Shown one piece after another: positions 27,345 through 52,542 of a DNA stretch of 64,000 nucleotides. Under the pieces are notes generated by a model. That model was not told the DNA's origin, did no database searches, and saw only the letters and a program-made list of their open reading frames with translations. Every line of letters starts with the position of its first letter. The stretch's first letter is position 1. The stretch spans positions 367,579-431,578 of the forward strand of contig NW_003314386.1 in NCBI RefSeq assembly GCF_000143415.4, given 5' to 3'. This DNA comes from Selaginella moellendorffii (taxonomy: Eukaryota > Plantae > Lycopodiophyta). The position numbers and the translations under genes were made by a program.

Positions 27345-27869
27345 ATGGCAATGGGTAAACGGGCGGCAGCGAGGGCGGCGATAGTATTCTTGGTGCTTGT
27401 CGTGACGCAGGCATGCGGACGTGATTACTGCTCTCTCCGCCAGGCGCGCGGCTGCGGGAACGGCACTGTTGAGGTCGAGCATGCTATGAGCGCGCACAAG
27501 TGCTTCATAGCCGATACGGTTGTAGCTGCCACGCTCACAGATGTGCGCCGCCTCCCCAACTCGTATCTCATCCTTTTGGAGATGCCGGGCGTGACGAGCA
27601 GCAGCGATGTCAAGGTGGCGGTCTCGGGCTCTCAATTCCATCGAGTCGTGTCCATCGTTGGGATCTCTCACGAGGCGAAAGAGCGTCGCATCCTCAGGGA
27701 TCGTGGCGCCTTCACCAAGATGTTTGCGCGAGAGTTTGTGCTCCCCGATGCAGTGGACGCGGAGAGGATAAGCTACCAGCTTCGCAGTGGTCTCTTGCGG
27801 GTGACGCTGCCGCTTGTCCCAGGGCTGGAGCAGCAAGAGCAGCGAGAACAAGTTGTGGAGGAGGAGTAA
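27345..27869 (+). CDS. Signal-peptide HSP20/alpha-crystallin protein, truncated copy (one ACD) - copy 1
   Basis: Near-identical to the first 174 aa of 29182-30246; similarity breaks at ...GAGTA, creating a stop; TATATAA upstream. Confidence 0.8.
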   Translation: MAMGKRAAARAAIVFLVLVVTQACGRDYCSLRQARGCGNGTVEVEHAMSAHKCFIADTVVAATLTDVRRLPNSYLILLEMPGVTSSSDVKVAVSGSQFHRVVSIVGISHEAKERRILRDRGAFTKMFAREFVLPDAVDAERISYQLRSGLLRVTLPLVPGLEQQEQREQVVEEE

Positions 27870-28071
27870 CAGATGGGTGAGGTCGAGATATTATTTCACG
27901 GAAATTAAGTAGTTAACTGGGATAGGAAATGTTCATAGACATAAATGTACATTTTGGGGAGTGAAGTTTGCTCCACCGGCATATGTAACCTCTTAACCAG
28001 GGTATTTAAATGCCTAATGCCGCTGTTCTAAGCGCTGCCAAAGATCGAGGAGCGGGAAGCAACGTTCCCGT

Positions 28072-28600
28072 GCGCTCTCATGGCGCTGACGAGCAACAAG
28101 CGAGGGGACATGGACAAGATTTACGAGCTTCGGGACACGGGATATGTTTGATGAGATGCTCGTTTTGATGGAGTCTTACGCAGCTCCAATTCTCCAAGGT
28201 AAAATGATTCTTGAGCTTCAATCATTCGCAGGAGTTTTACGAGACTAAAGCAGCGGCGTGTTGTTCGTGTTGTCTTGGGAAAACATTGCTATGACAGTTT
28301 CGGAAGATCACGACCTTTGCTGGAGGAAATTGTAACAGCGCAGCTCTTGGTAAGCGTTGAGCTTTCCTTTTACGTAGCAGCTTTTCTATGATAATTGTCA
28401 ACGAGGTCTGCTTTAGTAGATTGGAGATGAGACTTTCATCTTATGGCGATGAGGCATTCAGAAGCTTCTGGAGCTCTGATCATGCAAGTGTTTTAAGCTT
28501 TCTTTGGTGTTTGCTCAGGTACTTAAAGTCTTTTTGCAAGTGTTTTCTCACCTTTCTTGGTTCCAAATTTTACCTCGCTTTGCCACTGGTATGTATGTCT
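28072..28600 (+). pseudogene. Chimeric EF-Tu fragment plus scrambled MATE exon/intron fragments
   Basis: 28072-28140 matches EF-Tu ~2860-2945 ([20 protein letters not shown]); 28155-28360 matches MATE ~57670-57742 then ~57172-57386. Confidence 0.8.
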
Positions 28601-28604
28601 CTTT

Positions 28605-28696
28605 GCGGCTACAAGCGCGTCCAGGAGAGATTTCTCGAGAAACACATGTCCGAGAGAATAGGAAGAGTCCTCAAGGAAGAGCTGCAGCAGCAGTGA
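28605..28696 (+). pseudogene. GT4 glycosyltransferase C-terminal fragment
   Basis: GYKRVQERFLEKHMSERIGRVLKE; related to 40890-40935. Confidence 0.6.
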
Positions 28697-28779
28697 CAGC
28701 CTCTTCCTTTTCGATTCGTGCCACAGATATTGGACAGCAGCACATCTCCGGACTTATGACTGATGCCTGGTTTGCAGCG

Positions 28780-29053
28780 TGCTTGGCGAGCTGGATATCA
28801 CTTTGCATGATCCGAGGAGTGTTTGCCACGCCAAGCTCAGCTGTCGGGCGTCTTGCTGCTGCCCGGCTCTTGCGAAGAATCGACCATGCAGTAGAAGAGG
28901 TTGGATCAGTCGGATCTCATCTGATAGACCTCTCTCCCTCGAGCTGCATCGACTGGAAGAGCGAGATAGCCGGGTTCCTGTTGGCCATGGCCTCGAAAGT
29001 TCTCTCATCATCGAGAAGAAATCCTGGAAGCATATTCGAAGAGCAAGCTGTAA
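28780..29053 (+). pseudogene. Degenerate C-terminal fragment ending in peroxisomal SKL (possibly GST-like)
   Basis: HAVEEVG..HLIDL..WKSEIA..WPRKFSHHREEILEAYSKSKL*; paralogous pieces at 41107-41283 (-) and 51262-51422 (+). Confidence 0.4.
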
Positions 29054-29181
29054 ACATTTATGAGGTCTGCAATAATAAACTTCAACAAATAACTTTTATA
29101 AAACTAAGAAGCAGCAATTTAAATGTGATTTTGATTCTTGATTATGATGAAGGTTTTACAGCGTATACTGTGTCTACATAT

Positions 29182-30246
29182 TTACCTGAAACAATACTTC
29201 GCCCTCATCCTCCCAAACTGAACACCTTGGCATATGAAATGCTCTAACGCTTTATTCCATAGGCCCGCTATCCTTTGCCCGAGGCTTGGAACATGTTTGG
29301 GTAGCGTCACCTTGAGAAGCCCATCACTGAGATGATATGTTGCCACATCCTGCACGACACCGCGGGGGAAGTAAAGCCTGCGAGCAAACACTTTGGTGCT
29401 CGCTCCGCCCCGCTCCACTCTCACCGCTTCTCCGCCATCATCTTCGTCTCGAGCAACGCCAGTGATCTCGAGCACAAAGCCCGACTTGTCCTCCACCCAA
29501 GCGATGTCCACGGTGGCCAACTGCGCGCCTGGCATCTCCGCGACGACCACATACGAGCCTGGACGATCCAAGATGTCCACCAATGGAGAGATGGTGACGA
29601 CGCTTGAGTCGTCACCACAATCATCTGCGTCGTTGGAGGCGAGAGCTTCAGGCCGAATGAGCCCGGCCGCGTCTGAAATGGTGCACGAGGCCGGAGGAAC
29701 ACGCGCGGCAGGCACCGCAAGGTACTCCTCCTCCTCCACAACTTGTTGTCGCTGCTCTCGCCCTGTTTGCTCCAGCCCTGGGACAAGCGGCAGCGTCACC
29801 CGCAAGAGACCACTGTGAAGCTGGTAGCTTATCCTTTCCGCGTCCACTGCATCGGGGAGCACAAACTCTCGCGCAAACATCTTGGTGAAGGCACCACGAT
29901 CCCTGAGGATGCGACGCTCTTTCGCCTCGTGAGAGATCCCAACGATAGACACGACTCGATGGAATTGAGAGCCCGAGACCGCCACCTTGACATCGCTGCT
30001 GCTCGTCACGCCCGGCATCTCCAAAAGGATGAGATACGAGTTGGGGAGGCGGCGCACATCTGTGAGCGTGGCAGCTACAACCGTGTCGGCTATGAAGCAC
30101 TTGTGCGCGCTCATAGCGTGCTCTACCTCAACCGTGCTGTTGCCGCAGCCGCGCGCCTGGCGGAGAGAGCAGTAATCACGGCCGCACGCCTGCGCCGCGA
30201 CAAGCACCAAGAATACCATCGCCACCCTCGCTGCTGCCATCGCCAT
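29182..30246 (-). CDS. Signal-peptide tandem double alpha-crystallin-domain (HSP20-like) protein - copy 2, intact
   Basis: 354 aa intronless; hydrophobic leader MVFLVLVAAQAC; ACD1 DV..SYLILLEMPGV..FAREFVLPDAVD..GLLRVTLP; ACD2 VDI..YVVVAEMPGA..VERG..FARRLYFP..DGLLKVTLPK. Confidence 0.9.
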   Translation of the reverse strand: MAMAAARVAMVFLVLVAAQACGRDYCSLRQARGCGNSTVEVEHAMSAHKCFIADTVVAATLTDVRRLPNSYLILLEMPGVTSSSDVKVAVSGSQFHRVVSIVGISHEAKERRILRDRGAFTKMFAREFVLPDAVDAERISYQLHSGLLRVTLPLVPGLEQTGREQRQQVVEEEEYLAVPAARVPPASCTISDAAGLIRPEALASNDADDCGDDSSVVTISPLVDILDRPGSYVVVAEMPGAQLATVDIAWVEDKSGFVLEITGVARDEDDGGEAVRVERGGASTKVFARRLYFPRGVVQDVATYHLSDGLLKVTLPKHVPSLGQRIAGLWNKALEHFICQGVQFGRMRAKYCFR

Positions 30247-30282
30247 TCTTCACCCTTCTCTGCCCTAGCAACTGGACTAGGA

Positions 30283-30321
30283 CTTATATACAAGAAAAGA
30301 AAAGGTATGAGCTCCCACGTG
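30283..30321 (-). promoter_or_regulatory. TATA box and G-box of double-ACD copy 2
   Basis: TATATAA ~30284-30290 and CACGTG 30316-30321; same arrangement at 42421-42458 and ~52569-52606. Confidence 0.6.
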
Positions 30322-31264
30322 GAAGGATTCGATAGCTCAAGAATTCTGAGAGTCGATCAAGGGTCAAAAACATCAAGTTAAACTAGAAACAGATCCTCAC
30401 CATCTTCGTCTCCTGTTTTTGTCGACTCTTTCTTCGCTAGCGGAGAAAAAATAAATTGAAGAACGTGGTTTTCTTAATGCTCTAATCAGGAGGTGTTTAG
30501 GAAAATTTATAAATTATTAAAAAAATTAATTTAAATGAATGCCACCCAAAAGATATACTAATGCTATTCCTTTTTGGTTTGCTTAAGCAAACACTGAGTG
30601 GATATACCTACAATATTCTTGAATATTCTAGGATATTCTACCAGCTAAAGGTTGTTATTCATTTCGATTAATTTTGTATTTATAATTTATAAGCATGTTT
30701 ATAATTTATAAACTTTCTGAAACCTTTTCTTATATATTATTTTTATTTATTAATCTTGTTTACAAACATACTTATAATTATAATCTTTATTTGATCAATT
30801 GAATTAATAAGTAATAATAACACTACTATTTAACAAACTAAATGTTGCTACATGCAACCTGTAGCAATTAAGCGCTGCCGGAATAAAGACTTGCCACCCT
30901 TTGTGAATTTGCCCCCAGCGCAATTGTCCGGATTTCTTCGTCCAAATGCACATCCTCATCAGCCAGGAGAGTGCCGCGATGCTGAAATTTGCAAGGGGAA
31001 TGGAAGGTGCTCGTCCAAAGATAAAGAAGCCGATCACACCGATCCTCTACCCAGCGATCAAGGGCTGGAGTGCGCACGATTAACTTTGACCCGGTCCTCG
31101 GTCTCGGTTTTGCTCGAGAGCGTCTTTTGACTGACTGACTGCTTGTGGAGCCATCAAGAACTCATAAATCTCTCCCTCCATACTTAGGATCGAAAGAGAA
31201 GAGTTACCATTCCCGGTTCGAGTTGATCAATCTCGCTTGCGACCCTGGAAACGACGACGCACTC

Positions 31265-33049: not shown

Positions 33050-33553
33050 AAACATACATACCAGTGGCAAACCTGTTAGCAAAAGAATGGAAGTACCTGA
33101 GCAAACACCAAAGAAAGCTTAGAACACTTACCAAAGACTCGTCTCCAATCTACCAAAGCAGCAACCATTAGACCTCGCTGACAATTATCATAGAAAAACT
33201 TCTACGTAAAAGGAAAGCTCAAAGCTTACCAAGAGCTCCGCAGCTACAATTTCCTCCAGTCATGATGAGCCGAAACTGTCGTAGCAATGTTTTCCCCCAG
33301 ACAACACGAACAACGCTGGAAGAACCATCCGCCGCTGCTTTAGTCTCGTAAAACTCCTGCGAATGATTGAAGAATCATTTTACCTTGGAGAAGAGGCGGG
33401 TAAAACTCCATCAAAACGAGCATCCCTCAAAGATATCACGAGATAGAAACTTTGCTGCTTAGAAGCCGCGTCCCAAAGCTCGTAAAGCTTGTTCATGTCC
33501 CCTCGCTTGATCTCCTTGCTGCTCGTCAGCGCCATGAGAGCGATCCAGACACG
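33050..33553 (-). pseudogene. Second EF-Tu/MATE chimeric cassette (inverted relative to 28072-28600)
   Basis: 33465-33553 matches EF-Tu 2860-2963; 33225-33430 matches MATE exon 1 and exon 3 pieces. Confidence 0.8.
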
Positions 33554-33649
33554 CTGCCAGCACTCCTCGATCTTTCTGGAAGAGCAACGAACACCCCGGC
33601 ATTGGGCTTGCCCTCCATCGCTGCTGCGCTTTGACCGTACTGAGCAATA

Positions 33650-34870
33650 GCCGCGATAATCGAACATGTCCCGCGCGGGCATTCGATCGAAGAGCTTAAG
33701 CGCCACAGCAACATCCGCGATCTGGGCATATGCAGGATGATCACGCTCCAGGCAACAAGATCGCGCTCCTGCATGGAATTCTTCCACAACTACGATGGTG
33801 GCTTACGCATGAAATCTCAAGCTGTGAGTAGCCCGAGAGGTCTTCAATTCCATCCTGTTCGGGCATTCGATCGAAGACTTTCACTGCGTCATGCAAATGC
33901 CCTGCTTGGGTAAATGCTGCTAGCATCGCATTCCCCACCACGCTGTTTCTCTCGGGCATTATGCCAAACAGATGCTTCGCCTCCTCAATCCTGTTTTGGT
34001 CAGCACACCATCACAGACCATGCGACGATGTTCTTCGCGGGCCTTGAATCGAAGAGTTGCTTTGCCAGGAATAGATTCCCTGCTCGGGCATAGCACTGGT
34101 ACAGTTGCCAAGCACACGGCATTCCACTCTGGCATTCGATTTAATAGATTTCTCGCTTCGATCACTGCGACCACCTTTGTCTCTTTCAAGCCTCGAAAAG
34201 GACCGCACAACCTGATGCTCATGAAGAATTCTAAAAAAGGAAGTTTCGAGAGATTGAATGATCACACTCGAAGGAAATGGCAATTTGAGAAAAAGAGCAT
34301 ATTCCTTTTTTTTTCTTTCCTTGGGCGGAGAAAGAGAAGGCGTCAGACGAGGCGAATGATCGAATCAGTTTCACACTGGCTGCATCATCATTAGGTTGCT
34401 TGGCTAGAGCTGCAATCGATATGACAAACAATGGAGCAGTGAGTGATCATGACTAGGCTCCTCATGACAAGCTCTCTTGACGAGAATTCAGAAGGTGGCG
34501 AAAGTGGGAGCTCTAGGAGAAGGCACTCGATTGGTGCAATAGCTACTGAGTGAGAGTTCTCTTGGACGTTTTCAGGAGAGAACGCACTGGGAGATCTCGC
34601 TGAAGATTTTCTCTGCTCGAGAGAGATTTGTGAGAGCCCCACGATCATGGAGTTCCAGGAAATCGCAGTGTGGCACGGCATTGAATCTAACAGGTGCTGC
34701 GCTCGTTCCAGATCCCCCTGCTGCATGTAGATCACGAGGATCAATTTGCAGGACACCACGTCTCGCTCGGGCATTGAATCGAACAGCCGCTGGGCTTTGT
34801 TGTGATTGCCGCTCAGCAAGAACGCCGAGATCATCAAGTTCCGCAACACGAGATCCCGCTGCTTCATCTA
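33650..34870 (-). pseudogene. PLS-class PPR remnants
   Basis: FDRMPERDVVS/W, MPERNSVVGNAMLAAFTQAGHL motifs broken by frameshifts. Confidence 0.8.
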
Positions 34871-35399
34871 GCGACTGAAGATGGTCTTGGCCTTGTCTGG
34901 ATCATGTTTCAGAGTGCAGTGCTCACCAGAGGAGTGGAATCGATGATAGCTTGTGCTCGATCGACATTGCCAAGCTCGCTGTGAGCGGAAGATCAGAGAA
35001 CTCACAGACACGATATCGCCTCCTTGATCGATCCATTGTGAGAAAATCTCGCAATGAGAGTGTTCCACAACACTTAATTCTTCTCTATCATCGTGTCGAA
35101 GATCTGTCTTTCTGTTTCCAGATGCCTGGCTTAGGCATTCGCGTGAACCATAGCAGTCTAGGTAACTACATTCTATCTGAGAATGTTTCCGAAAACATTA
35201 TCGGCATCTATCAAACTATCGCTTTAAGAGTACGCCTATAACATTTTGGGCCAAGAGATCACATCTCTCTCGTCCATGGTATCAAAGAGAAGCTTCAATA
35301 CTTAAACATACCCGTTCTGGGTATATGGTGTAAGCATCGCGTTCTAGGGATTAGGAGCGATCGAAAACCAATAGTGATTTAAACTTTTATGAATGAATG

Positions 35400-35765
35400 A
35401 GACGAGACTCTCCACGAATTTCTTAAGGTTCGTATGAGAAGAACCTCCGGGAGAAGCAGCCTTCAATCTCCTGCCTTGCTCTCCCTCCATGATCGCCCTC
35501 ACTTCTCTTCCACCTCTTCTCTCGGCGCAAATCCATCCTTCCCTCCAGATCTCGAGAATTATATTCCCACGCCCTCGCCTTCCAGCACCAGCTTGGTTCG
35601 TGATTTGCTCGAACATAGAAGGCCACCCCAGCATTGGCACTCCACACGGCAACGGCTCTCGAGCATGGAGTTCCATCCCCCTGTTGATGCGTGCTGCATG
35701 ATCTCTAGCTGCGGCTCCAAGCTCACGAACAATCCTCTAGAAACCTTTGTAGAACTCCTAGAGCA
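35400..35765 (-). pseudogene. Family-1 UDP-glycosyltransferase C-terminal (PSPG box) fragment
   Basis: GWNSMLES, CGVPMLGWPSMFEQITN, SPGGSSHTNLKKFVESL. Confidence 0.8.
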
Positions 35766-35784
35766 GAGTTGTTGGTCATCCTGA

Positions 35785-37860
35785 TACGATGCTACGCAGC
35801 TGATGGGAAGTTGGATCAAGCCCAGAGAATGTTTCATCGAATGCCCGAGAAGACTGTAGTGGCATGGACTGTGATGGTTACCGCATTTACCCAGAAAGGA
35901 ATTTGGATAGAAAAAAAGCGTTGTTTGGAGAGAAATCCTGTTTCTTGGGGTGCTCTAATGCAGCGCACGACCGGCTGGAAGAAGCGAAGCGTTTTTTTGA
36001 TGCGATGGAGAACCCAAAAATTCACGTCTACACTGCGATGATCACTGCGTATGCCAAAGCTGGAGAAATTGAAAATGCCGAGAGGACTCTCATGCCTGAG
36101 AAGGACGTGGTCGCTCAAACTACAATGCTGCAAGCGTTTGCGCACAAGGTCTTGTCGAGAAGACAAGGAATATCTTTTATTTAATCCTTGATAAGGATGA
36201 AATGGCTTGGAACGCTATGATCACTGCATATGCCCAAAACGGGCAAGCATTTCGTGCAAAGCAAGTGTTTGATTCCATGCCCACAAAGAGACGAAACATC
36301 GTCACTGGGAACTCGATGCTCTCGGCGTTTAATCTCAATGGCCATCCTCACCAAGCTCTGGAGCTGCTAAAAACCATGCAGCTCGAGAGGATCAAACCAA
36401 ACGAGATAGCTTTCATGCAGCCCCATGGAGACGACGAAGAGATGCGCTGGTGGCAGATGATGGACAGTCCACAGCACCAAATCCATCATGAGAGTTCGAT
36501 CGGAGGCCAAACTGGAAGAGAAACAAAAATCACAATGATTGATCCATGAAAATCTAGCAAAGAGAAAAAATCAAGAGAATTTACACGATGGCAAATGGTG
36601 GAGAGAAATCCCAATGCAATCTTGTATGCTCTGAAAGGTTTGAGGATTCAAGCCAGAAGTCTTGGTCTACACCATAGAGCTCTTTGCAAAATTGGAGCGG
36701 GGATCTCAAAATCCCACCACACTGCCACTCTCACCCTGCATCCCACCCACTGCCATACAAGCTCCTGTGATCATCCTCCGCCCAGAGGAGTTCCACGTTC
36801 TTGCCCCAGACTCCTTTTCATGGAAAATCCTGCTCCAAGCTTACATTCACAATCGTCAGCTTCACACGTTTTTTATTCCGTGCCCGGGAAGAATGTAGTG
36901 ACATGGAATGCGATTCTTTTGGCAAATGCCCAAAACTGGCAAATGTACGTCGCAAGGCTTGGGACGTAGTTTGCATGACGCTGCCTTGTTTGCTTCTGTC
37001 ACTGGATTCGCGAAAGCTGGAATGATCAGCGAGGCTAGAAACCAATTTGACAACATGTCCAAGAGAGATTCTGTGTTGTGGAATGCGTTTGAGATTTTCT
37101 CGAAGCAAAGAAGCTGTTCGACAGGATGGAAAGAGATCATCAATCCAGTTTTATGGAACTCTATGATTGTTGCACGACCCCAGTTTGGAGATCTTAATGA
37201 AGCAAGAAAGTTCTTTGCGAGGATGACGCAGAGAGCTTCCGTGTCATGGGGAACACTTACCAACTCATTTGCGCAGCATGGCTGCAGTGATATAGCAAAA
37301 GAAACATTCGTGTTATAGCGTGGACTGCAATGCTCTGACCAGACGCCCAGTGAGGTGAAACCAATCAATTACACAATCTCTTTGATTTAATGCCTCAAAG
37401 AAACCTTGTCTCGTGGACAGTTTTCTTAGCATGGAATGCTATGATCACTGCATATGCCGAAACAGGTATGTACGCAAGGCAAAGTGCTTGTTTGGCACTA
37501 TAGAAGTTCTAAAAGAATTGCATGGTCGGAGCGTAGGGGCAAAATGGACACTTAGGACGACGCTTGGACATTGTTTAGATGCTGTTTACAGCAAACATCA
37601 TGACCAGGAACGTTCTTGTCATGTAGTTTGCCCAGAATCTGTATCCATTCAGCTCTTTAAAGTCTTGAATCTGGAAGGATTCAAGAGTTTCATGGGCCTT
37701 TTGATCGCTTGCTGCCACCTTGGGCTGGTAATCCCTGCTAGAGACTCCTTGGCTCCAATGGTTTCTGAATACAATCTAAGTCCCGAGCAAGATCACTTGC
37801 TTGATTGGTGTTGCAAGAGCTGGGCTCTTGGATGATGCGAAGGAGATTGGTCCATTCACA
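35785..37860 (+). pseudogene. PLS/E-class PPR remnants
   Basis: VAWTVMVTAF, AWNAMITAYAQNG, IKPNEIAF, LLIACCHLGLV..MVSEYNLSPEQDH; many stops. Confidence 0.8.
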
Positions 37861-38369
37861 CATCCTAACTTAAATTTATATATTGCCTTAAAGTTATGGT
37901 TATTTCGCATTTAATCCTTACTTTCGTACATATAACTTACCTTAAATCAAATTTATGTTAAAAACACGTCTATTTCACACATCTTAGACAAAACGTAGAA
38001 GAAAGAACAATGTCCAGTTCAGCCCATGAGTGCTGGTATCTCAAACGATCCATCAAAACCTCCTCTTTGAAAAGTTTCTTCTTTGTTTCTTGGTCTAATC
38101 ATCATCCATTTATGGCGAGCGATGACAGTTCATACACCATGCTTTTGAGCCTTACATTTTTCAACACAGCCGATATTCACCAATGTTAGAGATGGATACA
38201 CTTTAAGCTAAGAGTTTGATCTCCAGACAAGCAGCGAACTTAAAGAAGAACTGGATTGAAAAAAGGTTAGCCTGAGAACTCCCTTGTCTTCTCGAATTGC
38301 TGGCAGTCATGATGAAGATGCTTCCAAACGAGAGGGCCGAGCCACGATCACGCTCGCCTAGCCATGAGG

Positions 38370-38712
38370 CAGGCAAGGTTCCTTTCCTCTGGGTGATACG
38401 ATCAAACTTTGCTCTAGGAGTTCTACAAAAGTTTCTAGAGGATTGTTCGTGAGGTGGGAGCCGCAGCTAGAGATCACGCAGTACGCATCAACAGGGGGAT
38501 GGAACTCCATGCTCGAGAGCTTGGCGTGTGGAGTGCCAATGCTGGGGTGGCCATCTATGTTCGAGCAAAACCGAATGCCAAGCTGGTGCTGGAGGGAATA
38601 GCATTCTCGAGATCTGGAGGGAAGGATGGATTTGCGCCGAGAGAAGAGGTGGAAGAGAAAGTGAGGGCGATCATGGAGGGAGAGCAAGGCAGGAAATTGA
38701 AGGCTGCTTCTC
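38370..38712 (+). pseudogene. UGT C-terminal fragment (inverted duplicate of 35455-35765)
   Basis: GWNSMLESLACGVPMLGWP, REEVEEKVRAIMEGEQG. Confidence 0.8.
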
Positions 38713-38794
38713 CCCGCGATGCTTACAGCATATTCCCAGAACGGGTATGCTTAAGAATTGAAGCTTCTCTTTGATACCATGGACGAGAGAGATG

Positions 38795-39420
38795 TGATCT
38801 CTTCGCAATGTTAGAGGTGTATGCCAAAAACGATTGTTTGATAGACGCCGATAATGTTTTTGCAAGAATGCCCAGATAGATTGTAGTTACCTGGACTGCT
38901 ATGATTAACGCAAATGCCCAAGCGGGGGATTTGCAAAAAGCGAGAGAGATCTTCGCAGAGAAGAATCTAGTGTCGTGGAACACTCTCATTGTGGGATTTG
39001 CTCACAATGGATCGATCGAGGAGGAGATATTGTGTCTGTGAGTTCTCTGATCTTCCGCTCACAGCGAGCTTAGCAATGTCGATCGAGCGCAAGCTATCTT
39101 CAATTTCACTCCTCTGGTGAGCACCGCGCTCTGAAACACAATCCTGGTGGACAAGGCCAAGACCATCTTCGGTTGCTAGATGAAGCGGCGGGATCTCATG
39201 TCACGGAAGTCAGTGATCTCATTGTTCTCGCCGACTGGCAATCACGATGAAGCCCAGCAGCTGTTCGATTCAATGCCCGAGCGAGATGTGGTGTCCTGCA
39301 AATTGATTCTCGTGATCTACATGCAGCAGGGGGATCTTGAACAAGTGCAGCACCTGTTCAATTCAATACTGCACCACGATGTGATCTCCTGGAACGCCAT
39401 GAGCACAGGGCTCTCGCAAA
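38795..39420 (+). pseudogene. PPR remnants (partly inverted duplicate of 34620-35050)
   Basis: VTWTAMINANAQAG, NLVSWNTLIVGFAHNG, FDSMPERDVVS. Confidence 0.75.
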
Positions 39421-39439
39421 TCTCTCCCGGGTGGAGAAA

Positions 39440-40420: not shown

Positions 40421-40429
40421 TGCCTGGAA

Positions 40430-40935: not shown

Positions 40936-41316
40936 CAGTGACAGACTCTTCCTTTCGATTCGTGCCACAGATATTGGACAGCAGCCCTCCGGACTTATGA
41001 CTGATGCCTTGATCATAATCAAGATCACATTTAAAGTGCTGCTACTTAATTCTATAAAAGGTTATGAGAGAAACTACAACATTTGTCTGCTAGACCTAAG
41101 AAACATTTAAAGCTTGCTCTTCGAATATGCTTCCAGGATTTCTTCTCGATGACGAGAGAACTTTCGAGGCCATGACCAACAGGAACCAAGCTCGGCTATC
41201 TCGCTCTTCCAGTCGATGCAGCTCGAGGGAGAGAGGTCTATCAGATGAGAGCCGACTATCAGATCCAACCTCTTCTACTGCATGAAGGTTTTACAGCGTA
41301 TACTCTGTCTACATAT

Positions 41317-42381
41317 TTACCTGAAACAATACTTCGCCCTCATCCTCCCAAACTGAACACCTTGGCATATGACATGCTTTAACGCTTTATTCCATAGGCC
41401 CGCTATCCTTTGCCCGAGGCTTGGAACATGTTTGGGTAGCGTCACCTTGAGAAGCCCATCACTGAGGTGATATGTTGCCACATCCTGCACGACACCGCGG
41501 GGGAAGTAAAGCCTGCGAGCAAACACTTTGGTGCTCGCTCCGCCCCGCTCTACTCTCACCGCTTCTCCGCCATCATCTTCGTCTCGAGCCACGCCAGTGA
41601 GCTCGAGCACAAAGCCCGACTTGTCCTCCACCCAAGCGATGTCCACGGTGGCCGACTGCGCGCCTGGCATCTCCGCGACGACCACGTACGAGCCTGGACG
41701 ATCCAAGATGTCCACCAATGGGGAGATGGTGACGACGCTTGAGTCGTCACCACAATCATCTGCGTTGTTGGAGGCGAGAGCTTCAGGCCGAATGAGCCGG
41801 GCCGCGTCTGAAATGGTGCACGAGGCCGGAGGAACACGCGCGGCAGGCACCGCAAGGTACTCCTCCTCCACAACTCCCTGTTCTCGCTGCTCTCGCCCTG
41901 TTTGCTCCAGCCCTGGGACAAGCGGCAGCGTCACCCGCAAGAGACCACTGTGAAGCTGGTAGCTTATCCTTTCCGCGTCCACTGCATCGGGGAGCACAAA
42001 CTCTCGCGCAAACATCTTGGTGAAGGCGCCCCGATCCTTGAGGATGCGACGCTCTTTTGCCTCGTGAGAGATCCCAACGATGGAGACGACTCGATGGAAC
42101 TGAGAGCCCGAGACCTCCACCTTGACATCGCTGCTGCTCGTCACGCCCGGCATCTCCAAAAGGATGAGATACGAGTGCGGGAGGCGGCGCACATCTGTGA
42201 GCGTGGCAGCTACAACCGTGTCGGCTATGAAGCACTTGTGCGCGCTCATAGCGTGCTCTACCTCAACCGTGCTGTTGCCGCAGCCGCGCGCCTGGCGGAG
42301 AGAGCAGTAATCACGGCCGCACGCCTGCGCCGCGACAAGCACCAAGAATACCATCGCCGCCCTCGCTGCCGCCAGCGCCAT
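41317..42381 (-). CDS. Signal-peptide tandem double alpha-crystallin-domain protein - copy 3, intact
   Basis: 354 aa, colinear and highly similar to copy 2; TATA and G-box upstream. Confidence 0.9.
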   Translation of the reverse strand: MALAAARAAMVFLVLVAAQACGRDYCSLRQARGCGNSTVEVEHAMSAHKCFIADTVVAATLTDVRRLPHSYLILLEMPGVTSSSDVKVEVSGSQFHRVVSIVGISHEAKERRILKDRGAFTKMFAREFVLPDAVDAERISYQLHSGLLRVTLPLVPGLEQTGREQREQGVVEEEYLAVPAARVPPASCTISDAARLIRPEALASNNADDCGDDSSVVTISPLVDILDRPGSYVVVAEMPGAQSATVDIAWVEDKSGFVLELTGVARDEDDGGEAVRVERGGASTKVFARRLYFPRGVVQDVATYHLSDGLLKVTLPKHVPSLGQRIAGLWNKALKHVICQGVQFGRMRAKYCFR

Positions 42382-42989
42382 TCTTCGCCCTTCTCTGCCC
42401 TAGCACCTGGACCAGGGGACTTATATACAAGAAAAGAAAAGGTATGAGCTCCCACGTGGAAGGATTCGATAGCTCAAGAATTCTGAGAAATGCTCTAATC
42501 AGGAGGTGTTTAGGAAACTTTATTAAAAACATAATTTAAATGAATGCCACCCAAAAGATATACTTAGTGCTATTCCTTTTTTGTAATTTAATTACTCTGG
42601 AATAAACTTGATGTTGCCCTAGAGCCTAGAGATGATCTGCGTGTCTGGAGAGATCCAAACTCTTGAAATTGGAGGCTTCGTAAACTTCTATTGACGTATT
42701 GTTGTCCCAAAGATGACGAGCTCTGAATCCTTGCAAGCTTGGAGCTGAAAATTGAAAATTCCTTGCCGATTTCCTGTGATTGAGCGTGAGAGAGGGAAAG
42801 ATTACACGGAGGAACGCAACCTTTTGCCGGCGATGAGCAGGACGAAGCTTCCAGAGGAAGATCTTCCCAGCACGAATGGCGGGCGTCCATTAGAACAAAT
42901 TGTTCTTCCAAGAAGGAATATGCAAAGATATTTGTCGGAATTTAGGGTTCTAGCGGGGGGTTTGGGCGGGAGGCTGTAGGCGCGAGACG

Positions 42990-44179: not shown

Positions 44180-44860
44180 GCCCACAAGTGACCCAAGCTT
44201 TGGCCGCTATACGAGATTTTGTTGCGGCTGCTAGCGCTGGCGAAAGATTGTTGTTTTACTTTTGTGGACACGGGACTCAATTCCCCGACAGAAACTTGGA
44301 CGAGCTGGATGGAAACGACGAGGCTTTATGCTTCAACGACGGGGTTTGTTGATTTCATCGCTGTTTACAATTTCATTTTCTGTCTTTGTTACAGTACTTG
44401 GTAGATGACATACTTCATAACGTCATGGTCCAGTATCTCCATGAAGGCGTCCACCTGACTGCCATATTCGATTCCTGTCACAGCGGGACTGTGCTTGATC
44501 TTCCATATGGAAACACTGGATCTGGATGGTTTAACGCATCGTCCCAGACGCCGCCAGAGATATTACAAGCCGGAGTGTTTTTCAGAACGAGCGTGGTCTC
44601 AATTTCTGCATGCTTAGACTCTGAGTTATCATATTTTGTAAGTGCAGAGAAAGTTCCACATTTACTAATCTTGTGAAGTTTTCTTTTAGGACGAAGTCAA
44701 TCAGAGGGGCTGGTTCACGAGCAATATGACGCACTACATACAAGAAGGTGCTACAACCTACGGGGCCATTCTAAGTGATATGCAGAATTATCATCCCAAT
44801 TCTACCATGATGATCAGCTCTAGTTTCAAGTTTGACTTGACTAGAACACTTGATCTCTAG
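44180..44860 (+). pseudogene. Metacaspase (type I-like), 5'-truncated; three exons remain open
   Basis: LLFYFCGHGTQ (catalytic His), [26 protein letters not shown] (catalytic Cys), ISACLD, last exon to TAG 44860; N-terminal strand not found. Confidence 0.85.
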
Positions 44861-45427
44861 TTTCAGTGTAAGTATTTCCTTTGACGTGTTTCTCCATCTT
44901 GAGTTCTTTTGATTAGGAACAAGATCTTTTTGGGAATGCAAGCAATGCTGCTTGCAAAGAGCATGTGATTGACGGCGATAAAATACGAGACAAGAAAATT
45001 TTGACTTCAAGAAGGTTCTGGTTTTTCTCATTGATTTGCTTGCAGAAGAGCGAGGAAGCTGCTTGTCTCACCAGACAGTGCCCGGACTCAAGAAAGCACA
45101 GTAGCTACGATCGTTGCCGACTGATTTACCCGAGACGAAAGTATGAAGGGGCTGGACAATGTGCTGGACCAGTGCTTTTCTTCTGGCGAGGTCACTTATT
45201 CCACTCACCGATAAATTGCGATAAGTTTTTTCGAGCAGTGCAAATATTACAACGTAACTTTGTTTTTCTCGCAGGAGGTTGATTTGCTACCTTCTTGATT
45301 AGCGAAGAAAGAATGGAGAGTGGAAAAAGCCGGAGACGAAGTCCACGCTTCCTTCTGAGGATCAGCTCTAAAAGGTGAGAATCTGTTTCTACTTTAACTA
45401 CTAGTTTTTTATGCGTTCTTTTGCAGT

Positions 45428-45525
45428 TCGTACCAGTTGCCAGCCTGAGAGATCCGGAGGATTGTGGACGGTCCTCCCAATCCAGCGCTCTCCTCACCCA
45501 AGCGCGACAGGGTCCTCTTCATCGA
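45428..45525 (+). pseudogene. Fragment of chloroplast glutamyl endopeptidase (S9D)-like gene
   Basis: [29 protein letters not shown] resembles the conserved N-terminal motif of this family. Confidence 0.55.
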
Positions 45526-45584
45526 AAATTCCTGGTACTAAAGTATTTCACACAACTTATATCTGGTACTTGGCTTCCAAAGAT

Positions 45585-46055
45585 TGCTCACATGTCGCAT
45601 GAAATTCGTACTCCAATGAATGCCGTGATTGGCATGGACGCTGAAACGGACATAACGGATGAGCAACGCGAGTATGCTTCTACTACTCGCAGCAGTGGAG
45701 AGGTATTGCTGGGGATTATCAATGTTATCCTTGATTACAGGTAAGAAGCGGATCTAAATTCACGTCATGCTGAGCTTGGTTGCTCTCGTTCTATTGCAGC
45801 AAAATTGAAGCGGGTAACATGGAGCTTGACTTGCAACCTACAGAGATCCTGCAACGTGTTGAAGAATCATTTGATCTTGTCGCGAAGGGTCTTGAGTTGA
45901 CTTAGGATTCTGTTCCTAGCCCTTTGCTCGGGGAGTCGGCTCGAATCCGCCAAATCCTGGTCAGTTACTTCTTGCAGCTTATTCGCATCTGACTCTAATT
46001 CTGCAGGTAAGTCTTCTTAGCAACGCTGTAAAATTCAACGAGAAAGGATACGTCA
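45585..46055 (+). pseudogene. Histidine kinase HisKA/HATPase fragment with introns
   Basis: [39 protein letters not shown]|SKIEAGNMELD..GESARIRQIL|VSLLSNAVKF; in-frame stop and deletions. Confidence 0.85.
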
Positions 46056-47060: not shown

Positions 47061-48295
47061 TTATCCCGGCACCCGACGACCGGTCTCGAGCTCGTCAATC
47101 CTTTTGCACAGGGCTCCAACGGTGATCTTGTGCTCCTTCTCCTGAGTGCTCATCATGTCCCGCAGCTCCTTCATCTCCTTGAGGAACAGGGTGCTCATCT
47201 CCTCGTTCTTCTGCACGAGCGTGGAGTTCTGGAGCTCCAGGCTCGCCACCCTGCTGCTGAGCTTCCCATTCTCCTGCTCCAGGCTCGCCACCCTGCTGCT
47301 GAGCTTCCCATTCTCCTGCTCCAGGGTCGCCACCCTGCTCCTGAGCTTCCCATTCTCCTGGTCCAGGCTCACCACCCTGCTGCTAAGCTCCCCTATCTGC
47401 TTCTCCAGGCCCACGATCGTCATCTCATCAGTCACTTTCTCCACCTTCTTTCTCTCCAGGTCCTTCTGGAGGGATTTCTTCTGCTTTGTGTCATTGTCCC
47501 GGTAGCGCCTCTCCGCATTGTAGAGCTCTAGCTTCTCCATGACCTTCTCCTGGAGGAGAAGCTTTTCGGCTTCGTGCTCGGCTTGCTGGAGGAGAAGCTG
47601 CTTGTCAACCTCCTGCTGGACAAGCTCGCTCTGCTTGTCCAGCAGATCTCGCTGCTCCCGGAGGAGCTTCTTGTGCGTGTCCAGCTCCTCCCGCTTCTCT
47701 CGCAGCTGGCGCTGGAGGCTGTCGATGTGGCTCACCAGCTGGTCATGCCTCTTCTTCGCCACCTTCGCAGCCTCCTCCTCCTGCTTCCTCGCCTCCTTCT
47801 GAGCCGCCTCCCTGATCTTCATCTGCTGCTGCTCGGCCTCCCTGATCATCACCTGCTGCTTCTCGGACTCCGCCTTCCCCTTTAGCTCCTCCTGCGCGGC
47901 AAGCAGCTGGTACTTCAGCTGATTCTTCTCGCTCTGCAGCCGCCCCAGCTGCTCCTGCTGCGGATTCAGCATCACAGCTCTGGCCATCGCCACACCCTTC
48001 TGCCTCGCCGTTTCCTCCTGGGACCAGAACCACATACCTTCCGGATGGCTCACAAAGTCCTCCTTGGACAGCCCCGTCGCTTCCAGGAACTGAGAGATCC
48101 CCTTCTCAACGCTCTCATCGAAGGCTGCCTGCGCCAGCACTCCACCGCTGTAGTGGATAGTGTAGACCAGATCCGGCTCAGCGAAGTGGATCGTCACTGT
48201 GACCTAGCGGGAAACCCTTCTCCTCTAGCTGAGCCTGAGAGAGAGATCATTACCTGATCATCGCCGCCGCTTGAATCCTTGTTCGGATCCTCCAT
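47061..48295 (-). CDS. Unknown coiled-coil protein (~394 aa, 2 exons) with 14-aa tandem repeats
   Basis: ATG 48295, exon 1 MEDPNKDSSGGDDQ, 50-nt GT-AG intron 48204-48253 splices in frame onto the 378-aa ORF; E/Q/K/L-rich; strongly GC3-rich codons. Confidence 0.75.
47232..47410 (-). repeat. 42-bp coding tandem repeat (~4 units, LEQENGKLSSRVAS)
   Basis: Directly visible in DNA and protein. Confidence 0.9.
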
Positions 48296-48576
48296 CTCCT
48301 TCTCGTTCTTCTGCTGCTTCCGGAGAAAAACCCTGAATTTTTACTCTTTTATTGAGCCCAGATCGCAGACACGTAGGCTGTCCAGTTGTCGGCGGCCACA
48401 TGGAGATGCGGGCGAATATTCCTTTCTCTGGAAGAATTAGGGTTCCTGGAGCTTGAGTGTCGCGGGGAGGGGGGAGATGAGCATAGTCCACAACTCATGG
48501 CGCCAGCAGCATCCCAGGATCATCATCGCATGAGCCGGAGCTTCTCCTACGATGTGCTGCTCCGCGATGTTTCCGG

Positions 48577-48597
48577 TTTAGGGTTTAGGGTTTAGGG
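48577..48597 (+). repeat. (TTTAGGG)3 interstitial telomere-type repeat / telo-box
   Basis: Directly visible. Confidence 0.85.
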
Positions 48598-49815: not shown

Positions 49816-50099
49816 CAGATCAGCAGTGAGCTGCACAGAAGGCTTCGGATTTTTTTAAGGCTTTTCTTCGATCAGAGCATCGCCATCGGATGCTTCATTA
49901 TCCTTTTTCTTTTATTTTTTATCTTTATTTTATTTATTAATTAGTTTTTTATCCTTAACTTCTACACACTTGTGCACTCGTTCATCATCATGTTTGAAGG
50001 AATAACTCTGGCCGCGGCCCTCCACCATGCGGCTACAAATTGTTCATGCTCTTAATGTCGACTACGACTACATTTCAGGATACTACGACTAAATCACCT

Positions 50100-50753
50100 T
50101 CCTTGGAGTTGATCGTTGGAAGCAGCTCGAAACAGCAGGTGATCACCAGCTTATGGAGTGAGGAGACTTCTGGCAAACTCCGGAGCTGAAACATCGTTGC
50201 ATCGAGATGATCAATGAAACGAGTACCGTTATTCCTCAGCGTGATCTACTTCCACCAGCATCTCTTCAACAACTCCCAGACAGGTTAAAAGAGTTCGAGC
50301 TTCTTTGGAGCATCCAGTGAATGAAAGCCTCTGAATCAAAATCTCAAGCACCTGAGTTTGGCTGTACTTGTTAGACTCTCCCTTGGAAGTTTGAAAGGTC
50401 CAACGTACACAGCGACCTGCTATGTTGGCTAGAAGCACAGCTTCATTTTTTCAAGACTCAAAGCTTCAAGTACTCTAGATTTGCCGACAGAGGACGATCA
50501 ATTGAAGATCTTTGTTGTTCATAACCTCGAGGCTCTTCAGGGAATGCGACCGGATGCTGAGCTTATCAGTATCAATCCAGAGCTCGGTGAGGTTGGGGGT
50601 ATCCAAAGTCACCTTGCCAGTTGTGGTTGATGGAGTTGAACTTTTAGCAACCAGTTGATGTAATAAGAAGTAAGACGCTGTTTCAGTTTCAGTAGCACCT
50701 GTGTTCTGGGCAAGCCAGGATGGGAAAGGGCCCTCTGTATCAACGGCCCTCAT
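50100..50753 (-). pseudogene. Leucine-rich (F-box/RNI-like) remnant
   Basis: LDTPNLTELWIDTDKLSIRSHSLKSLEV and LRSLPEVSSLHKLVITCC; multiple stops. Confidence 0.4.
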
Positions 50754-50821
50754 TGTCGAAGGTATAGATTAATTAACCACGATGTAAATCTTTGTAAACT
50801 CTCATTCCATGTACTAAAATT

Positions 50822-51123
50822 AAATGCCTGAAATATCCAATTCTCTCTAAAAAAAACTCACACCTTGATAACTTTGAGTAGAGTTTGTTGTCCCTCAAAA
50901 GTTGTAAAACACTTCATACTATGTTCCTCCACTGAAGAGTTGAATACTAGAATATCATCAAAATAATATTGAAATCAAATGCTTGAAATATCCAATTTTC
51001 TCTAAAAAAAACTCACACTTTGATAATTTTGAGTAGAGTTTGTTATCCCTCAAAAGTTGTAAAACATTTCATACCATGTTCCTCCACTGAAAAGTTAAAT
51101 ACTAGAATATCATCAAAATAATT
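50822..51123 (+). repeat. ~155-bp AT-rich tandem duplication
   Basis: 50822-50970 repeated at ~50977-51123. Confidence 0.9.
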
Positions 51124-51515
51124 AATTGTAAATTTTCCTAAATAAGGGTATAAAACTTAATTCATCAATCTTTGAAAAGTTATAGAAGCATTTGTCAAAC
51201 TAAACAACATCCATAATGACTTATCCTTGTCTAAAATGTAATTTTCAAACCATCCTTTGGCTTGAGGTTGGATCTGATAGTTCCCTCAAGCTGCATTAAC
51301 TAGAAGAGCGAGATGGCCGAGCTTTGATGCCCTGCAAGCACATGGTTCTTGGCCATGGCCTCAAAAGTTCTCTCATCATCAAGAGGAAATCCTGGAAGCA
51401 TATTCAAAGAGCAAGCTTTTAATGTTTCTTAGGTCTGCAATAACGCAATAAATATTGTAGTTTCTCTCATAACCTTTTATAGAATTAAAAAGCAGCATTT
51501 TAAATGTGATATTGA

Positions 51516-52542
51516 TTATGATGAATACACTCTGACATGCTTTAACGCTTTATTCCATAGGCCCGCTATACTTTGCCCAAGGCTTGGAACATGTTTGGGT
51601 AGCGTCACCTTGAGAAGCCCATCACTAAGGTGATATGTTGCCACATCCTGCACAACACCGCGGGGGAAGTAAAGCCTGCGAGCAAACACTTTGGTGCTCG
51701 CTTCTCCCCGCTCTACTCTCACCGCTTCTCCGCCATCATCTTCGTCTCGGGCAACGCCAGTGATCTCGAGCACAAAGCCCGACTTGTCCTCCACCCAAGC
51801 GATGTCCACGGTGGCCGACTGCGCGCCTGGCATCTCCGCGACGACCACGTACGAGCCTGGACGATCCAAGATGTCCACCAATGGGGAGATGGTGACGACG
51901 CTTGAGTCGCCACCACAATCATCTGCGTCGTTGGAGGCGAGAGCTTCAGGCCGAATGATCCCGGCCGCGTCTGAAATGGTGCACGAGGCCGGAGGAACAC
52001 GCGCGGCAGGCACCGCAAGGTACTCCTCCTCCACAACTCGCTGTTCTCGCTGCTCTCGCCCTGTTTGCTCCAGCCCTGGGACAAGCGGCAGCGTCACCCG
52101 CAAGAGACCACTGTGAAGCTGGTAGCTTATCCTTTCCGTGTCCACTGCATCGGAGCACAAACTCTCGCGCAAACATCTTGGTGAAGGCACCACGATCCCT
52201 GAGGACGCGACGCTCTGTCGCCTCGTGAGAGATCCCAACGATGGACACGACTCGATGGAAATGAGAGCGCGAGACCTCCACCTTGACATCGCTGCTGCTC
52301 GTCACGCCCGGCATCTCCAAAAGGATGAGATACGAGTTGGGGAGGCGGCGCACATCTGTGAGCGTGGCAGCTGCAACCGTGTCGGCTATGAAGCACTTGT
52401 GCGCGCTCATAGCGTGCTCTACCTCAACCGTGCTGTTGCCGCAGCCGCGCGCCTGGCGGAGAGAGCAGTAATCACGGTCGCACGCCTGCGCCGCGACAAG
52501 CACCAAGAATACCATCGCCGCCCTCGCTGCCGCCATCGCCAT
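51516..52542 (-). pseudogene. Double-ACD protein copy 4 with 2-nt frameshift
   Basis: ATG 52542; GCATCGGAGCAC versus GCATCGGGGAGCAC in copies 2 and 3 at ~52152; different tail (KHVRVYSS*). Confidence 0.85.

What the first reader, a model, noticed from the sequence alone, without database searches (positions are those of the whole stretch)
27345..52542. Four-copy family of secretory-pathway, tandem double alpha-crystallin-domain proteins
Seen: copies at 27345-27869 (+), 29182-30246 (-), 41317-42381 (-) and 51516-52542 (-). They encode a signal-peptide-like leader, a Cys-rich segment, ACD1, an acidic linker with two more Cys, and ACD2. No KDEL/HDEL-type tail. An N-X-T sequon is kept even where X differs (GNSTV versus GNGTV in copy 1). 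Established: plant ER sHSPs have one ACD and usually a retention signal, and the Arabidopsis two-ACD protein ACD31.2/32.1 is peroxisomal. Inference: a secreted or endomembrane, disulfide-stabilised, covalently pre-dimerised holdase chaperone. I do not recognise this architecture from described plant sHSP classes. Two copies remain fully open while most surrounding fragments have decayed.
Basis: partly seen in the sequence, partly recalled or inferred. Interest (0 to 1): 0.82.

Follow-up and report, generated by a model that had tools for sequence, protein, structure and literature searches.

The report
Signal-peptide double alpha-crystallin gene family
A spikemoss (Selaginella moellendorffii) carries a small, transcribed gene family for proteins with an export-type leader, conserved cysteines and two small-heat-shock-protein domains in one chain; this layout is not described for plants, and its function is untested.

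Summary
The window is Selaginella moellendorffii DNA with four copies of one intronless gene.

- **State of the copies:** two are intact (354 aa). One is a truncated 5' half (174 aa). One is broken by a 2-bp deletion and has lost its tail.
- **Architecture:** the intact proteins have an n/h/c signal-peptide-like leader (AQA|C), four N-terminal Cys, HSP20 domain 1, an acidic linker with two Cys, HSP20 domain 2, and a conserved helical tail without K/HDEL.
- **Wider family:** two further lineages elsewhere in the genome are about 50% identical and keep the same layout. Nothing similar turned up outside this species.
- **Origin:** domain trees show one internal duplication before the three lineages split. 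It is independent of the two-domain proteins of bacteria and animals. The nearest plant class is cytosolic class II, but the family lies outside that clade.
- **Activity:** the intact copies are under purifying selection (dN/dS 0.28, p=0.0007). Contigs of four probable RNA runs cover exactly the gene and not its flanks.

Entry into the secretory pathway is well supported by sequence rules but was not run through a predictor. Holdase activity, disulfides and an intramolecular "pre-dimer" remain inference; the AlphaFold model does not show a strand-swapped pseudo-dimer. First readers of this scan noted the same family on other pieces of this genome. I rate it a new variant of a known kind, of moderate interest.

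The parts
27345..27869 (+). Copy 1: truncated, inverted duplicate (174-aa ORF) with leader, 4 Cys, NGT sequon, ACD1 and the start of the acidic linker. It has no ACD2. The TATA box is kept upstream but the G-box is not.
   Evidence: (one HSP20 stretch, E 2.6e-10); dN/dS to copy 2 = 0.19; no contig that can be assigned to it
29182..30246 (-). Copy 2: intact intronless gene of 354 aa, identical to residues 1-354 of SELMODRAFT_430190.
30187..30246 (-). Copy 2, residues 1-20: signal-peptide-like leader. The n-region is MAMAAAR, the h-region is VAMVFLVLVAA, and the c-region is AQA with Cys at +1.
   Evidence: the tripartite pattern is kept in P0006 and P0154; it is the only hydrophobic 19-aa window in the protein
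30085..30186 (-). Copy 2, residues 21-54: Cys-rich N-terminal region (C21, C26, C34, C50) with sequon N36-S-T. ARGCG and C50 are invariant across the family.
   Evidence: low pLDDT
29767..30084 (-). Copy 2, residues 55-160: ACD1 (HSP20 fold). The best solved relative is pea class II HSP17.7 (5DS1).
   Evidence: (pLDDT 90-97)
29611..29766 (-). Copy 2, residues 161-212: acidic linker with C188 and C210. C210 is invariant and aligns with C50 of the first unit.
   Evidence: pLDDT < 50
29281..29610 (-). Copy 2, residues 213-322: ACD2 (HSP20 fold), 35% identical to ACD1.
   Evidence: (pLDDT 87-92)
29185..29280 (-). Copy 2, residues 323-354: C-terminal tail. The conserved VPSL motif is followed by a predicted helix and two Cys (C339, C352). 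There is no K/HDEL.
   Evidence: (helix 322-343, pLDDT ~83)
30247..30351 (-). Core promoter duplicated together with the gene: TATA box at 30284-30290 and palindromic G-box CCACGTGG at 30315-30322.
   Evidence: the TATA box is in all four copies and the G-box in copies 2-4; these are motif matches only
29147..30270 (-). Transcript-like footprint. Contigs of four probable RNA runs from four studies cover this span, collinear with the DNA (no intron), and are absent from the flanks.
   Evidence: tables 2 and 8
41317..42381 (-). Copy 3: intact gene of 354 aa. Its allele on the other haplotype is SELMODRAFT_419652 (P0002).
42382..42488 (-). Copy 3 core promoter (TATA box and G-box), homologous to that of copy 2.
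51516..52542 (-). Copy 4: broken copy. A 2-bp deletion at about 52153 (codon ~130, ACD1 beta7 region) shifts the frame, and the tail is replaced from about 51533. The public model SELMODRAFT_430197 skips the break.

Best explanation

Shown:
- The repeat unit (a Cys, a beta2-like stretch, the ACD and a VPxL motif) was duplicated once inside the gene, before the family split into three lineages: A (this tandem array), B (P0006) and C (P0154).
- Array A then grew by local duplication of a ~1.2-kb unit made of the gene plus ~105 bp of promoter. It shows birth and death: two copies are intact, one is truncated and one is frameshifted.

Inferred:
- The leader takes the protein into the ER, where it is cut after A-x-A.
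- The eight Cys of the mature protein form disulfides, and N36 may be glycosylated.
- With no K/HDEL, membrane segment or GPI-type tail, the protein moves on by default to the apoplast or a post-ER compartment.
- There the two ACDs act as an ATP-independent binder of unfolding proteins (holdase), with the Cys-rich N-terminal arm and the C-terminal helix taking the roles of the usual N-terminal arm and IXI tail.
- It is probably not a classical heat-shock-factor target, because no conserved heat-shock element is present.
For: Architecture:
- Two HSP20 stretches, E 5e-19.
- AlphaFold gives two beta-sandwiches with pLDDT 87-97. They match plant, bacterial and yeast sHSP cores at TM 0.7-0.82.
- The hallmark motifs EMPG, FAR.F.LP and GLL.VTLP are kept in both domains.

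Leader and cysteines:
- Basic n-region, 11-15-residue hydrophobic core and A-x-A|C are kept in lineages A, B and C despite ~50% identity.
- There is no other hydrophobic window.
- C34, C50 and C210 are invariant.

Functional genes:
- dN/dS for copy 2 versus copy 3 is 0.28 (16 synonymous, 14 non-synonymous changes; binomial p = 0.0007). Between lineages it is ~0.46.
- All three lineages are intronless open genes.

Expression:
- Contigs of four runs from four studies (contig sets of 20-31 Mb) lie on 29147-30270 at depth 11-75, with none on the flanks apart from three short pieces in the 3' flank that seem to be a paralogue's 3' end. They run unspliced through the stop codon.

Origin:
- The six family ACDs form one clade (96/87 and 92/85). 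ACD1s (99-100) and ACD2s (100/99) are reciprocally monophyletic.
- ACD1 scores 35.5 bits against pea class II versus 22.3 against class I; the family profile gives E 7e-13 against 5DS1.

Restriction:
- An exhaustive HMMER search of 1.8 billion representatives found full-length relatives only in S. moellendorffii. The next hits have E > 1e-14.
Against: - No signal-peptide predictor, localisation, glycosylation or disulfide data were available. Targeting rests on von Heijne-type rules applied by hand.
- Chaperone activity is inferred from the fold only. Many plant ACD proteins are not chaperones.
- The runs are labelled RNA only by guess. Most contigs carry differences from copy 2, so they come from alleles or paralogues (for example a P0002-like +CGC form). 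Expression of copies 2 and 3 themselves is not proven.
- The sequon is missing at that position in lineage B.
- dN/dS of ~0.46 between lineages shows only moderate constraint.
- Other lycophyte genomes could not be searched, so 'restricted to this species' may reflect the databases.
- pTM of 0.48 leaves the arrangement of the two domains open.
Confidence: 0.6

Rival explanations
1. The protein is exported, but the ACD fold serves a non-chaperone role. It could be a secreted or cell-wall, vacuolar or defence-related binding protein, in a tandem family that evolves quickly by birth and death.
For: - The family is a tandem array with intact, truncated and frameshifted members.
- dN/dS between lineages is moderate, ~0.46.
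- Large lineage-specific insertions sit in the ACD2 beta4-beta5 loop.
- There is no conserved heat-shock element.
- The Cys-rich ends are typical of secreted binding proteins.
- From general knowledge, many plant ACD proteins are not holdases.
Against: Both ACDs keep the sHSP hallmark motifs and the beta5-beta7 loop with the RxER-like stretch. The closest relatives of each domain are bona fide sHSPs.
Confidence: 0.22
2. The N-terminal hydrophobic stretch is not a cleaved signal peptide. It would instead be an uncleaved signal anchor that tethers the protein to a membrane, or part of an organellar presequence.
For: No predictor was run. The hydrophobic stretch counted from residue 1 to 21 is long if Ala residues are included.
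Against: - The core without charged residues is only 11-15 residues, which is short for a membrane span.
- Small residues at -3/-1 (AQA, AVA/VAA) are conserved in all three lineages.
- The leader lacks the Ser/Thr-rich or amphipathic, basic character of plastid or mitochondrial presequences.
Confidence: 0.08
3. Origin rival: the family entered the Selaginella lineage by horizontal transfer of a bacterial sHSP gene, rather than deriving from the plant cytosolic class II line.
For: - The genes are intronless and were found in one species only.
- In both trees the nearest single outside sequence is a Lentisphaerota sHSP, although with weak support (88/82 and 87/64).
- ACD2 scores best against bacterial sHSPs.
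- A Cys directly follows the A-x-A site in all lineages, and V-A-A-C in lineage C looks like a bacterial lipobox.
- Bacterial two-ACD proteins with a hydrophobic N terminus exist (P0013).
Against: - Plant class I and II sHSP genes are also mostly intronless (general knowledge).
- ACD1 is clearly nearest to plant class II among solved structures. Class II proteins are the only plant sHSPs found among the named proteins checked in the best 150 hits.
- The bacterial two-ACD proteins arose by their own internal duplications.
- The deep nodes are unresolved.
Confidence: 0.1
4. The array is decaying or non-functional DNA, and the open frames are there by chance or because the duplications are recent.
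For: Two of the four copies are damaged. The surrounding PPR genes are in pieces. The public gene models disagree at the 3' end.
Against: - There is a significant excess of synonymous changes (p = 0.0007).
- The architecture is kept over dS of about 0.9-1.2 in three lineages.
- A transcript-like footprint is present.
Confidence: 0.04

Closest known systems
Plant cytosolic class II small heat-shock proteins (e.g. pea HSP17.7, PDB 5DS1; wheat 17.5 kDa class II)
   Same: Nearest plant relatives of ACD1: 35.5 bits, E 9e-8 for the single sequence and E 7e-13 for the family profile. Both share the (D/E)MPG(V/L) and FxRxFxLP...GxLxVT motifs and are intronless.
   Different: Class II proteins have one ACD, no leader and no Cys-rich ends, and they end in an IXI-type tail. 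In the tree the fern-plus-angiosperm class II clade (100/100) excludes the Selaginella family.
Plant ER-localised sHSP class (e.g. pea HSP22.7, Arabidopsis HSP22.0; from general knowledge)
   Same: An sHSP domain behind an N-terminal signal peptide, so both would act in the endomembrane system.
   Different: The ER class has a single ACD and a C-terminal retention-type tetrapeptide, and it is heat-induced through heat-shock elements. Here there are two ACDs, no K/HDEL-like end and no conserved heat-shock element. No ER-class protein appeared among the named proteins checked in the best 150 hits.
Two-ACD sHSPs of animals (Taenia Tsp36, PDB 2BOL; Schistosoma p40; earthworm double-ACD sHSPs, PMC13226371; multi-ACD crustacean proteins)
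   Same: Two or more ACDs in one polypeptide.
   Different: These arose by independent duplications. No signal peptide is reported in PMC13226371. The whole-chain superposition on Tsp36 is poor (TM 0.21-0.25, rmsd 19.6 Å).
Bacterial two-ACD HSP20 proteins from metagenomes (P0013, P0143, P0063, P0016, P0042)
   Same: Tandem ACDs. P0013 also has an N-terminal hydrophobic segment.
   Different: Identity is 21-25%. Each has its own internal duplication (its d1 and d2 are sisters, 99-100 support). They lack the conserved Cys pattern and the VPSL-helix tail.

Membership tests
HSP20/alpha-crystallin superfamily (PF00011) | An ACD beta-sandwich detectable by the family profile above the curated cut-off | tested here: met
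   68.7 bits against a cut-off of 20.8, with two stretches. The AlphaFold model shows two beta-sandwiches that match sHSP cores at TM 0.7-0.82.
HSP20/alpha-crystallin superfamily (PF00011) | ATP-independent holdase activity and oligomer formation | not testable with these tools
   This needs purified protein, aggregation assays and SEC-MALS.
Plant cytosolic class II sHSP | Branches inside the class II clade | tested here: not met
   The class II clade (Adiantum, Kingdonia, wheat, Vigna and others) has 100/99-100/100 support and excludes the family.
Plant cytosolic class II sHSP | A single ACD with no targeting leader | tested here: not met
   There are two ACDs and a hydrophobic leader.
Plant ER sHSP class | N-terminal signal peptide | tested here: inconclusive
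   The n/h/c pattern with A-x-A is conserved in three lineages, but no trained predictor was available.
Plant ER sHSP class | C-terminal ER-retention-type tetrapeptide | tested here: not met
   The C termini are KYCFR, SCILY and RTILR.
Plant ER sHSP class | Single ACD | tested here: not met
   Two ACDs.
Plant ER sHSP class | Heat-shock elements in the promoter / heat induction | tested here: inconclusive
   A perfect three-unit element occurs only at -382 of copy 2, in AT-rich copy-specific DNA. None is found in copies 3 and 4, the allele, or lineages B and C. Induction was not measured.
Plant ER sHSP class | Branches with ER-class sequences | not tested
   No ER-class reference sequence was on hand. 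None was among the named proteins checked in the best 150 hits.
Metazoan two-ACD sHSPs (Tsp36 type) | Common origin of the two-domain arrangement / similar domain packing | tested here: not met
   The internal duplication is specific to the Selaginella clade. TM to 2BOL_A is 0.21-0.25.

The most novel reading that the evidence does not exclude
A land-plant sHSP class of its own: a disulfide-bonded, possibly glycosylated, tandem-ACD chaperone that leaves the ER and works in the apoplast or a post-ER compartment. That would make it an extracellular ATP-independent holdase in a plant. It would have arisen in the Selaginella line by internal duplication of a class II-like ACD plus gain of a signal peptide, and it stays linked to metacaspase genes at its paralogous loci.
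Probability: 0.3. Interest if true: 0.7.

Novelty: new variant of a known kind. Interest (0 to 1): 0.5.

Why it matters
Plant sHSPs are sorted into well-known cytosolic, organellar and ER classes, each with one ACD. A transcribed, selectively maintained family that joins an export leader, conserved cysteines and two ACDs would add a new architecture. It might also add a new workplace for these chaperones: the oxidising secretory pathway or the apoplast. It gives a natural test of whether a covalent ACD pair can replace the usual non-covalent dimer. The family is small and intronless, so it is easy to express and test. It also shows that tandem-ACD proteins arose independently in plants, animals and bacteria.

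Tried and rejected
- **Word search, ACD1 alone and family profile:** only S. moellendorffii proteins came back, so these gave no class assignment.
- **Literature:** searches by locus tags and by topic found no paper on this family in the held library. Waters/Vierling-type reviews were not retrievable.
- **Mobile 1.2-kb unit (transposon capture) as the way copies spread to 'other loci':** rejected for P0002. Its locus (L003) is the other haplotype of window 31.7-51.3 kb at 95-98% identity.
- **Common origin with bacterial two-ACD proteins:** rejected. Each has its own internal duplication.
- **Tsp36-like packing:** not supported.
- **ER-stress elements:** no ERSE (CCAAT-N9/10-CACG) or UPRE was found in any promoter. 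The G-box is in copies 2-4 but not in the allele of copy 3, so it carries little weight.
- **Public gene models of 473, 505 and 362 aa that splice past the stop codon:** not supported, because contigs run unspliced through the stop.
- **ORFs on the opposite strand and in other frames inside the genes:** by-products of GC-rich coding DNA (GC3 0.66-0.68).
- **Second structure job:** not used, because without coordinates or PAE it could not settle the domain packing.
Full report
**What is there**

The window is Selaginella moellendorffii DNA. The 354-aa ORF at 29182-30246 (-) is 100% identical to residues 1-354 of SELMODRAFT_430190.

- Copies 2 (29182-30246) and 3 (41317-42381) are intact. They are 97% identical in DNA and differ at 14 residues.
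- Copy 1 (27345-27869, +) is an inverted duplicate of the 5' half only.
- Copy 4 (51516-52542) has a 2-bp deletion at codon ~130 (about 52153). It also loses homology from codon ~338 (about 51533). The public model for it simply skips the break.

The duplicated unit is short. It consists of the gene, ~105 bp of upstream DNA and ~35 bp of downstream DNA. The conserved upstream part carries a TATA box in all copies and a CCACGTGG G-box in copies 2-4.

**Architecture**

Pfam HSP20 hits each intact protein twice, at 68.7 bits and E 5e-19.

An AlphaFold2 model built on a 121-row alignment gives two beta-sandwiches:
- residues ~55-157, pLDDT 90-97
- residues ~215-320, pLDDT 87-92

Residues 18-53 and the linker 171-212 have low confidence. 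A helix at 322-343 has pLDDT ~83. The whole model has pTM 0.48.

Foldseek matches each domain to the sHSP cores of wheat, pea, Xanthomonas, yeast and others, at TM 0.7-0.82.

The leader is MAMAAAR + VAMVFLVLVAA + AQA|C. It is the only hydrophobic 19-residue window in the protein.

After the predicted cut the protein has eight Cys: 21, 26, 34, 50, 188, 210, 339 and 352. It has one sequon, N36-S-T. It has no K/HDEL, second hydrophobic segment or GPI-like end.

**A wider family**

An exhaustive HMMER search of 1.84 billion cluster representatives found full-length relatives only in S. moellendorffii:
- P0006 (SELMODRAFT_427722, 375 aa, 52% identical)
- the cluster of P0007, whose full-length member is P0154 (XP_024521633, 391 aa)

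Both are intronless single-exon genes at other loci.

An alignment of the three lineages keeps these features:
- the tripartite leader with A-x-A followed by Cys
- ARGCG
- the Cys before ACD1 (C50) and the Cys before ACD2 (C210)
- the EMPG, FAR.F.LP and GLL.VTLP motifs in both domains
- a PK.VPSL motif followed by a Cys-containing tail

The sequon is present in lineages A and C but not at that place in B.

The next-best hits have E > 1e-14. They are crustacean multi-ACD giants, followed by ordinary single-ACD sHSPs. A profile word search again returned only S. moellendorffii proteins.

L003, which holds P0002, is the second haplotype of window 31.7-51.3 kb, so P0002 is the allele of copy 3. 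L004, which holds P0005, is a decayed ~78%-identical copy elsewhere.

**Origin**

ACD1 and ACD2 are 35% identical (E 7e-16). The alignment includes the Cys before each domain and the VP(G/S)L after it, so the repeated unit is larger than the ACD itself.

I built two maximum-likelihood trees of domain sequences:
- The six family domains form one clade (96/87 and 92/85).
- The ACD1s (99-100) and the ACD2s (100/99) are each monophyletic.

It follows that one internal duplication preceded the split into lineages A, B and C.

Bacterial two-ACD proteins (P0013/P0143, P0063, P0016) each pair their own two domains, so they arose independently.

Among solved structures ACD1 is clearly nearest to pea class II HSP17.7: 35.5 bits against 22.3 for class I, and E 7e-13 for the family profile. 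ACD2 has no class preference.

The only plant sHSPs found among the named proteins checked in the best 150 hits are class II, from wheat, Vigna, Acer, Escallonia, Kingdonia and Adiantum.

That class II clade (100/100) nevertheless excludes the family. The family's nearest single neighbour is a Lentisphaerota protein, with weak support.

The family is therefore not orthologous to any described class. A class II-like ancestor is the better guess, and a bacterial origin is not excluded.

**Are the genes alive?**

Copy 2 versus copy 3 shows 16 synonymous and 14 non-synonymous changes. That gives dN/dS 0.28 and binomial p = 0.0007 against neutrality. Between lineages dS is ~0.9-1.2 and dN/dS is ~0.46.

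Contigs from four runs of four studies were laid on 27000-31000. The runs' contig sets total only 20-31 Mb, and their RNA label is a guess.
- The contigs cover 29147-30270 at depth 11-75.
- There are none upstream of the gene. The 3' flank has only three short pieces (28486-28598, 28908-28958 and one near 28972-29004), which appear to belong to a paralogue's 3' end. One contig in one run lies on copy 1 and also fits the other copies.
- The contigs are collinear with the DNA through the whole ORF and the stop codon.

This is a transcript footprint of an intronless mRNA with a short 5' UTR below the TATA box.

Most contigs differ from copy 2 at a few sites or carry small in-frame indels. Two examples are +CGC, as in the P0002 allele, and a 6-nt insertion. 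Expression is therefore shown for the family, not for each copy. One run is filed under a second organism label.

**Mechanism: what is shown and what is inferred**

Shown:
- the domain content
- the conservation pattern
- selection
- probable transcription

Inferred from established rules (the von Heijne n/h/c and -3/-1 rules; default secretion of soluble plant proteins that lack retention or vacuolar signals):
- co-translational entry into the ER
- cleavage before C21
- disulfide formation
- onward transport

Inferred from family membership only: holdase activity.

The 'pre-dimerised' idea is not supported by the model. The beta5-beta7 loops, which in plant and bacterial sHSPs carry the swapped beta6 strand, are coil with pLDDT 44-55. 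The chain does not superpose on the two-ACD protein Tsp36 (TM 0.21-0.25). Coordinates and PAE were not available, so the packing stays open.

No conserved heat-shock element, ERSE or UPRE was found.

**Comparison with known classes and novelty**

The family differs from the plant ER class in having two ACDs, no retention signal and no conserved heat-shock element. It differs from class II in having a leader and two ACDs, and in its tree position. It differs from animal and bacterial tandem-ACD proteins because its duplication was independent.

The proteins are in public databases only as hypothetical 'SHSP domain-containing' proteins. I found no paper on them in the held library.

ACD31.2 is peroxisomal (PTS2) according to PMC9375579. 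The claim that it has two ACDs was not checked.

First readers of this scan had flagged the same family on this stretch and on two other pieces of the genome, none followed up.

**Limits**

- No signal-peptide predictor was available.
- No other lycophyte genome could be searched.
- No copy-specific or condition-specific expression data were obtained.
- The trees contain only the best database hits over ~108 columns.

Noticed in passing
window 44386-44676 (+); L001 7256-9188; L002 13356-13597 (-): A metacaspase-like (Peptidase_C14, DSCHSG) sequence lies within ~1-2 kb of a double-ACD gene or fragment at all three paralogous loci (lineages A, C and B). This could be a block duplication or a kept linkage.
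   Followed up: partly
L002 14734-15089: A partial second family member (~66% identical to part of ACD1 and the linker) lies 3.6 kb downstream of P0006, inside the span annotated as a P-type ATPase gene.
   Followed up: no
window 33380-40600: An inverted pair of broken pentatricopeptide-repeat gene pieces (arms 34343-35770 and 38405-39685, 83-91% identical). Many short PPR ORFs are present and none is intact.
   Followed up: partly
window 47061-48197 (-): A 378-aa coiled-coil ORF with four tandem SSRVA(S/T)LEQENGKL-type repeats. Its only matches are sub-threshold hits to bZIP_1 and Cnn_1N.
   Followed up: no
window 45421-45744 (+): An isolated HisKA (histidine kinase phospho-acceptor) fragment, E 1.2e-9. 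It is likely one exon of a larger gene.
   Followed up: no
window ~30616-30628 (-382 of copy 2): A perfect three-unit heat-shock element, GAATATTCAAGAA, sits within an AGAATAT-rich stretch. It is found in copy 2 only, not in copies 3 or 4, the allele, or lineages B and C.
   Followed up: partly
P0013, P0143 (metagenome proteins): Bacterial proteins with an N-terminal hydrophobic segment followed by two ACDs. This is a convergent parallel to the Selaginella architecture, produced by an independent internal duplication.
   Followed up: partly
window 54501-56600 and 50812-51121: Local tandem repeats: a ~1.03-1.05-kb unit in two copies (86-97% identical) and a 155-bp unit in two copies.
   Followed up: no
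window 28885-29153 vs 41007-41284: The DNA just downstream of copy 2 is an inverted version of the DNA downstream of copy 3. Contigs of two runs follow the copy-3 arrangement, which suggests a 3' UTR of at least ~65 nt (possibly up to ~300 nt) for that copy or its allele.
   Followed up: partly
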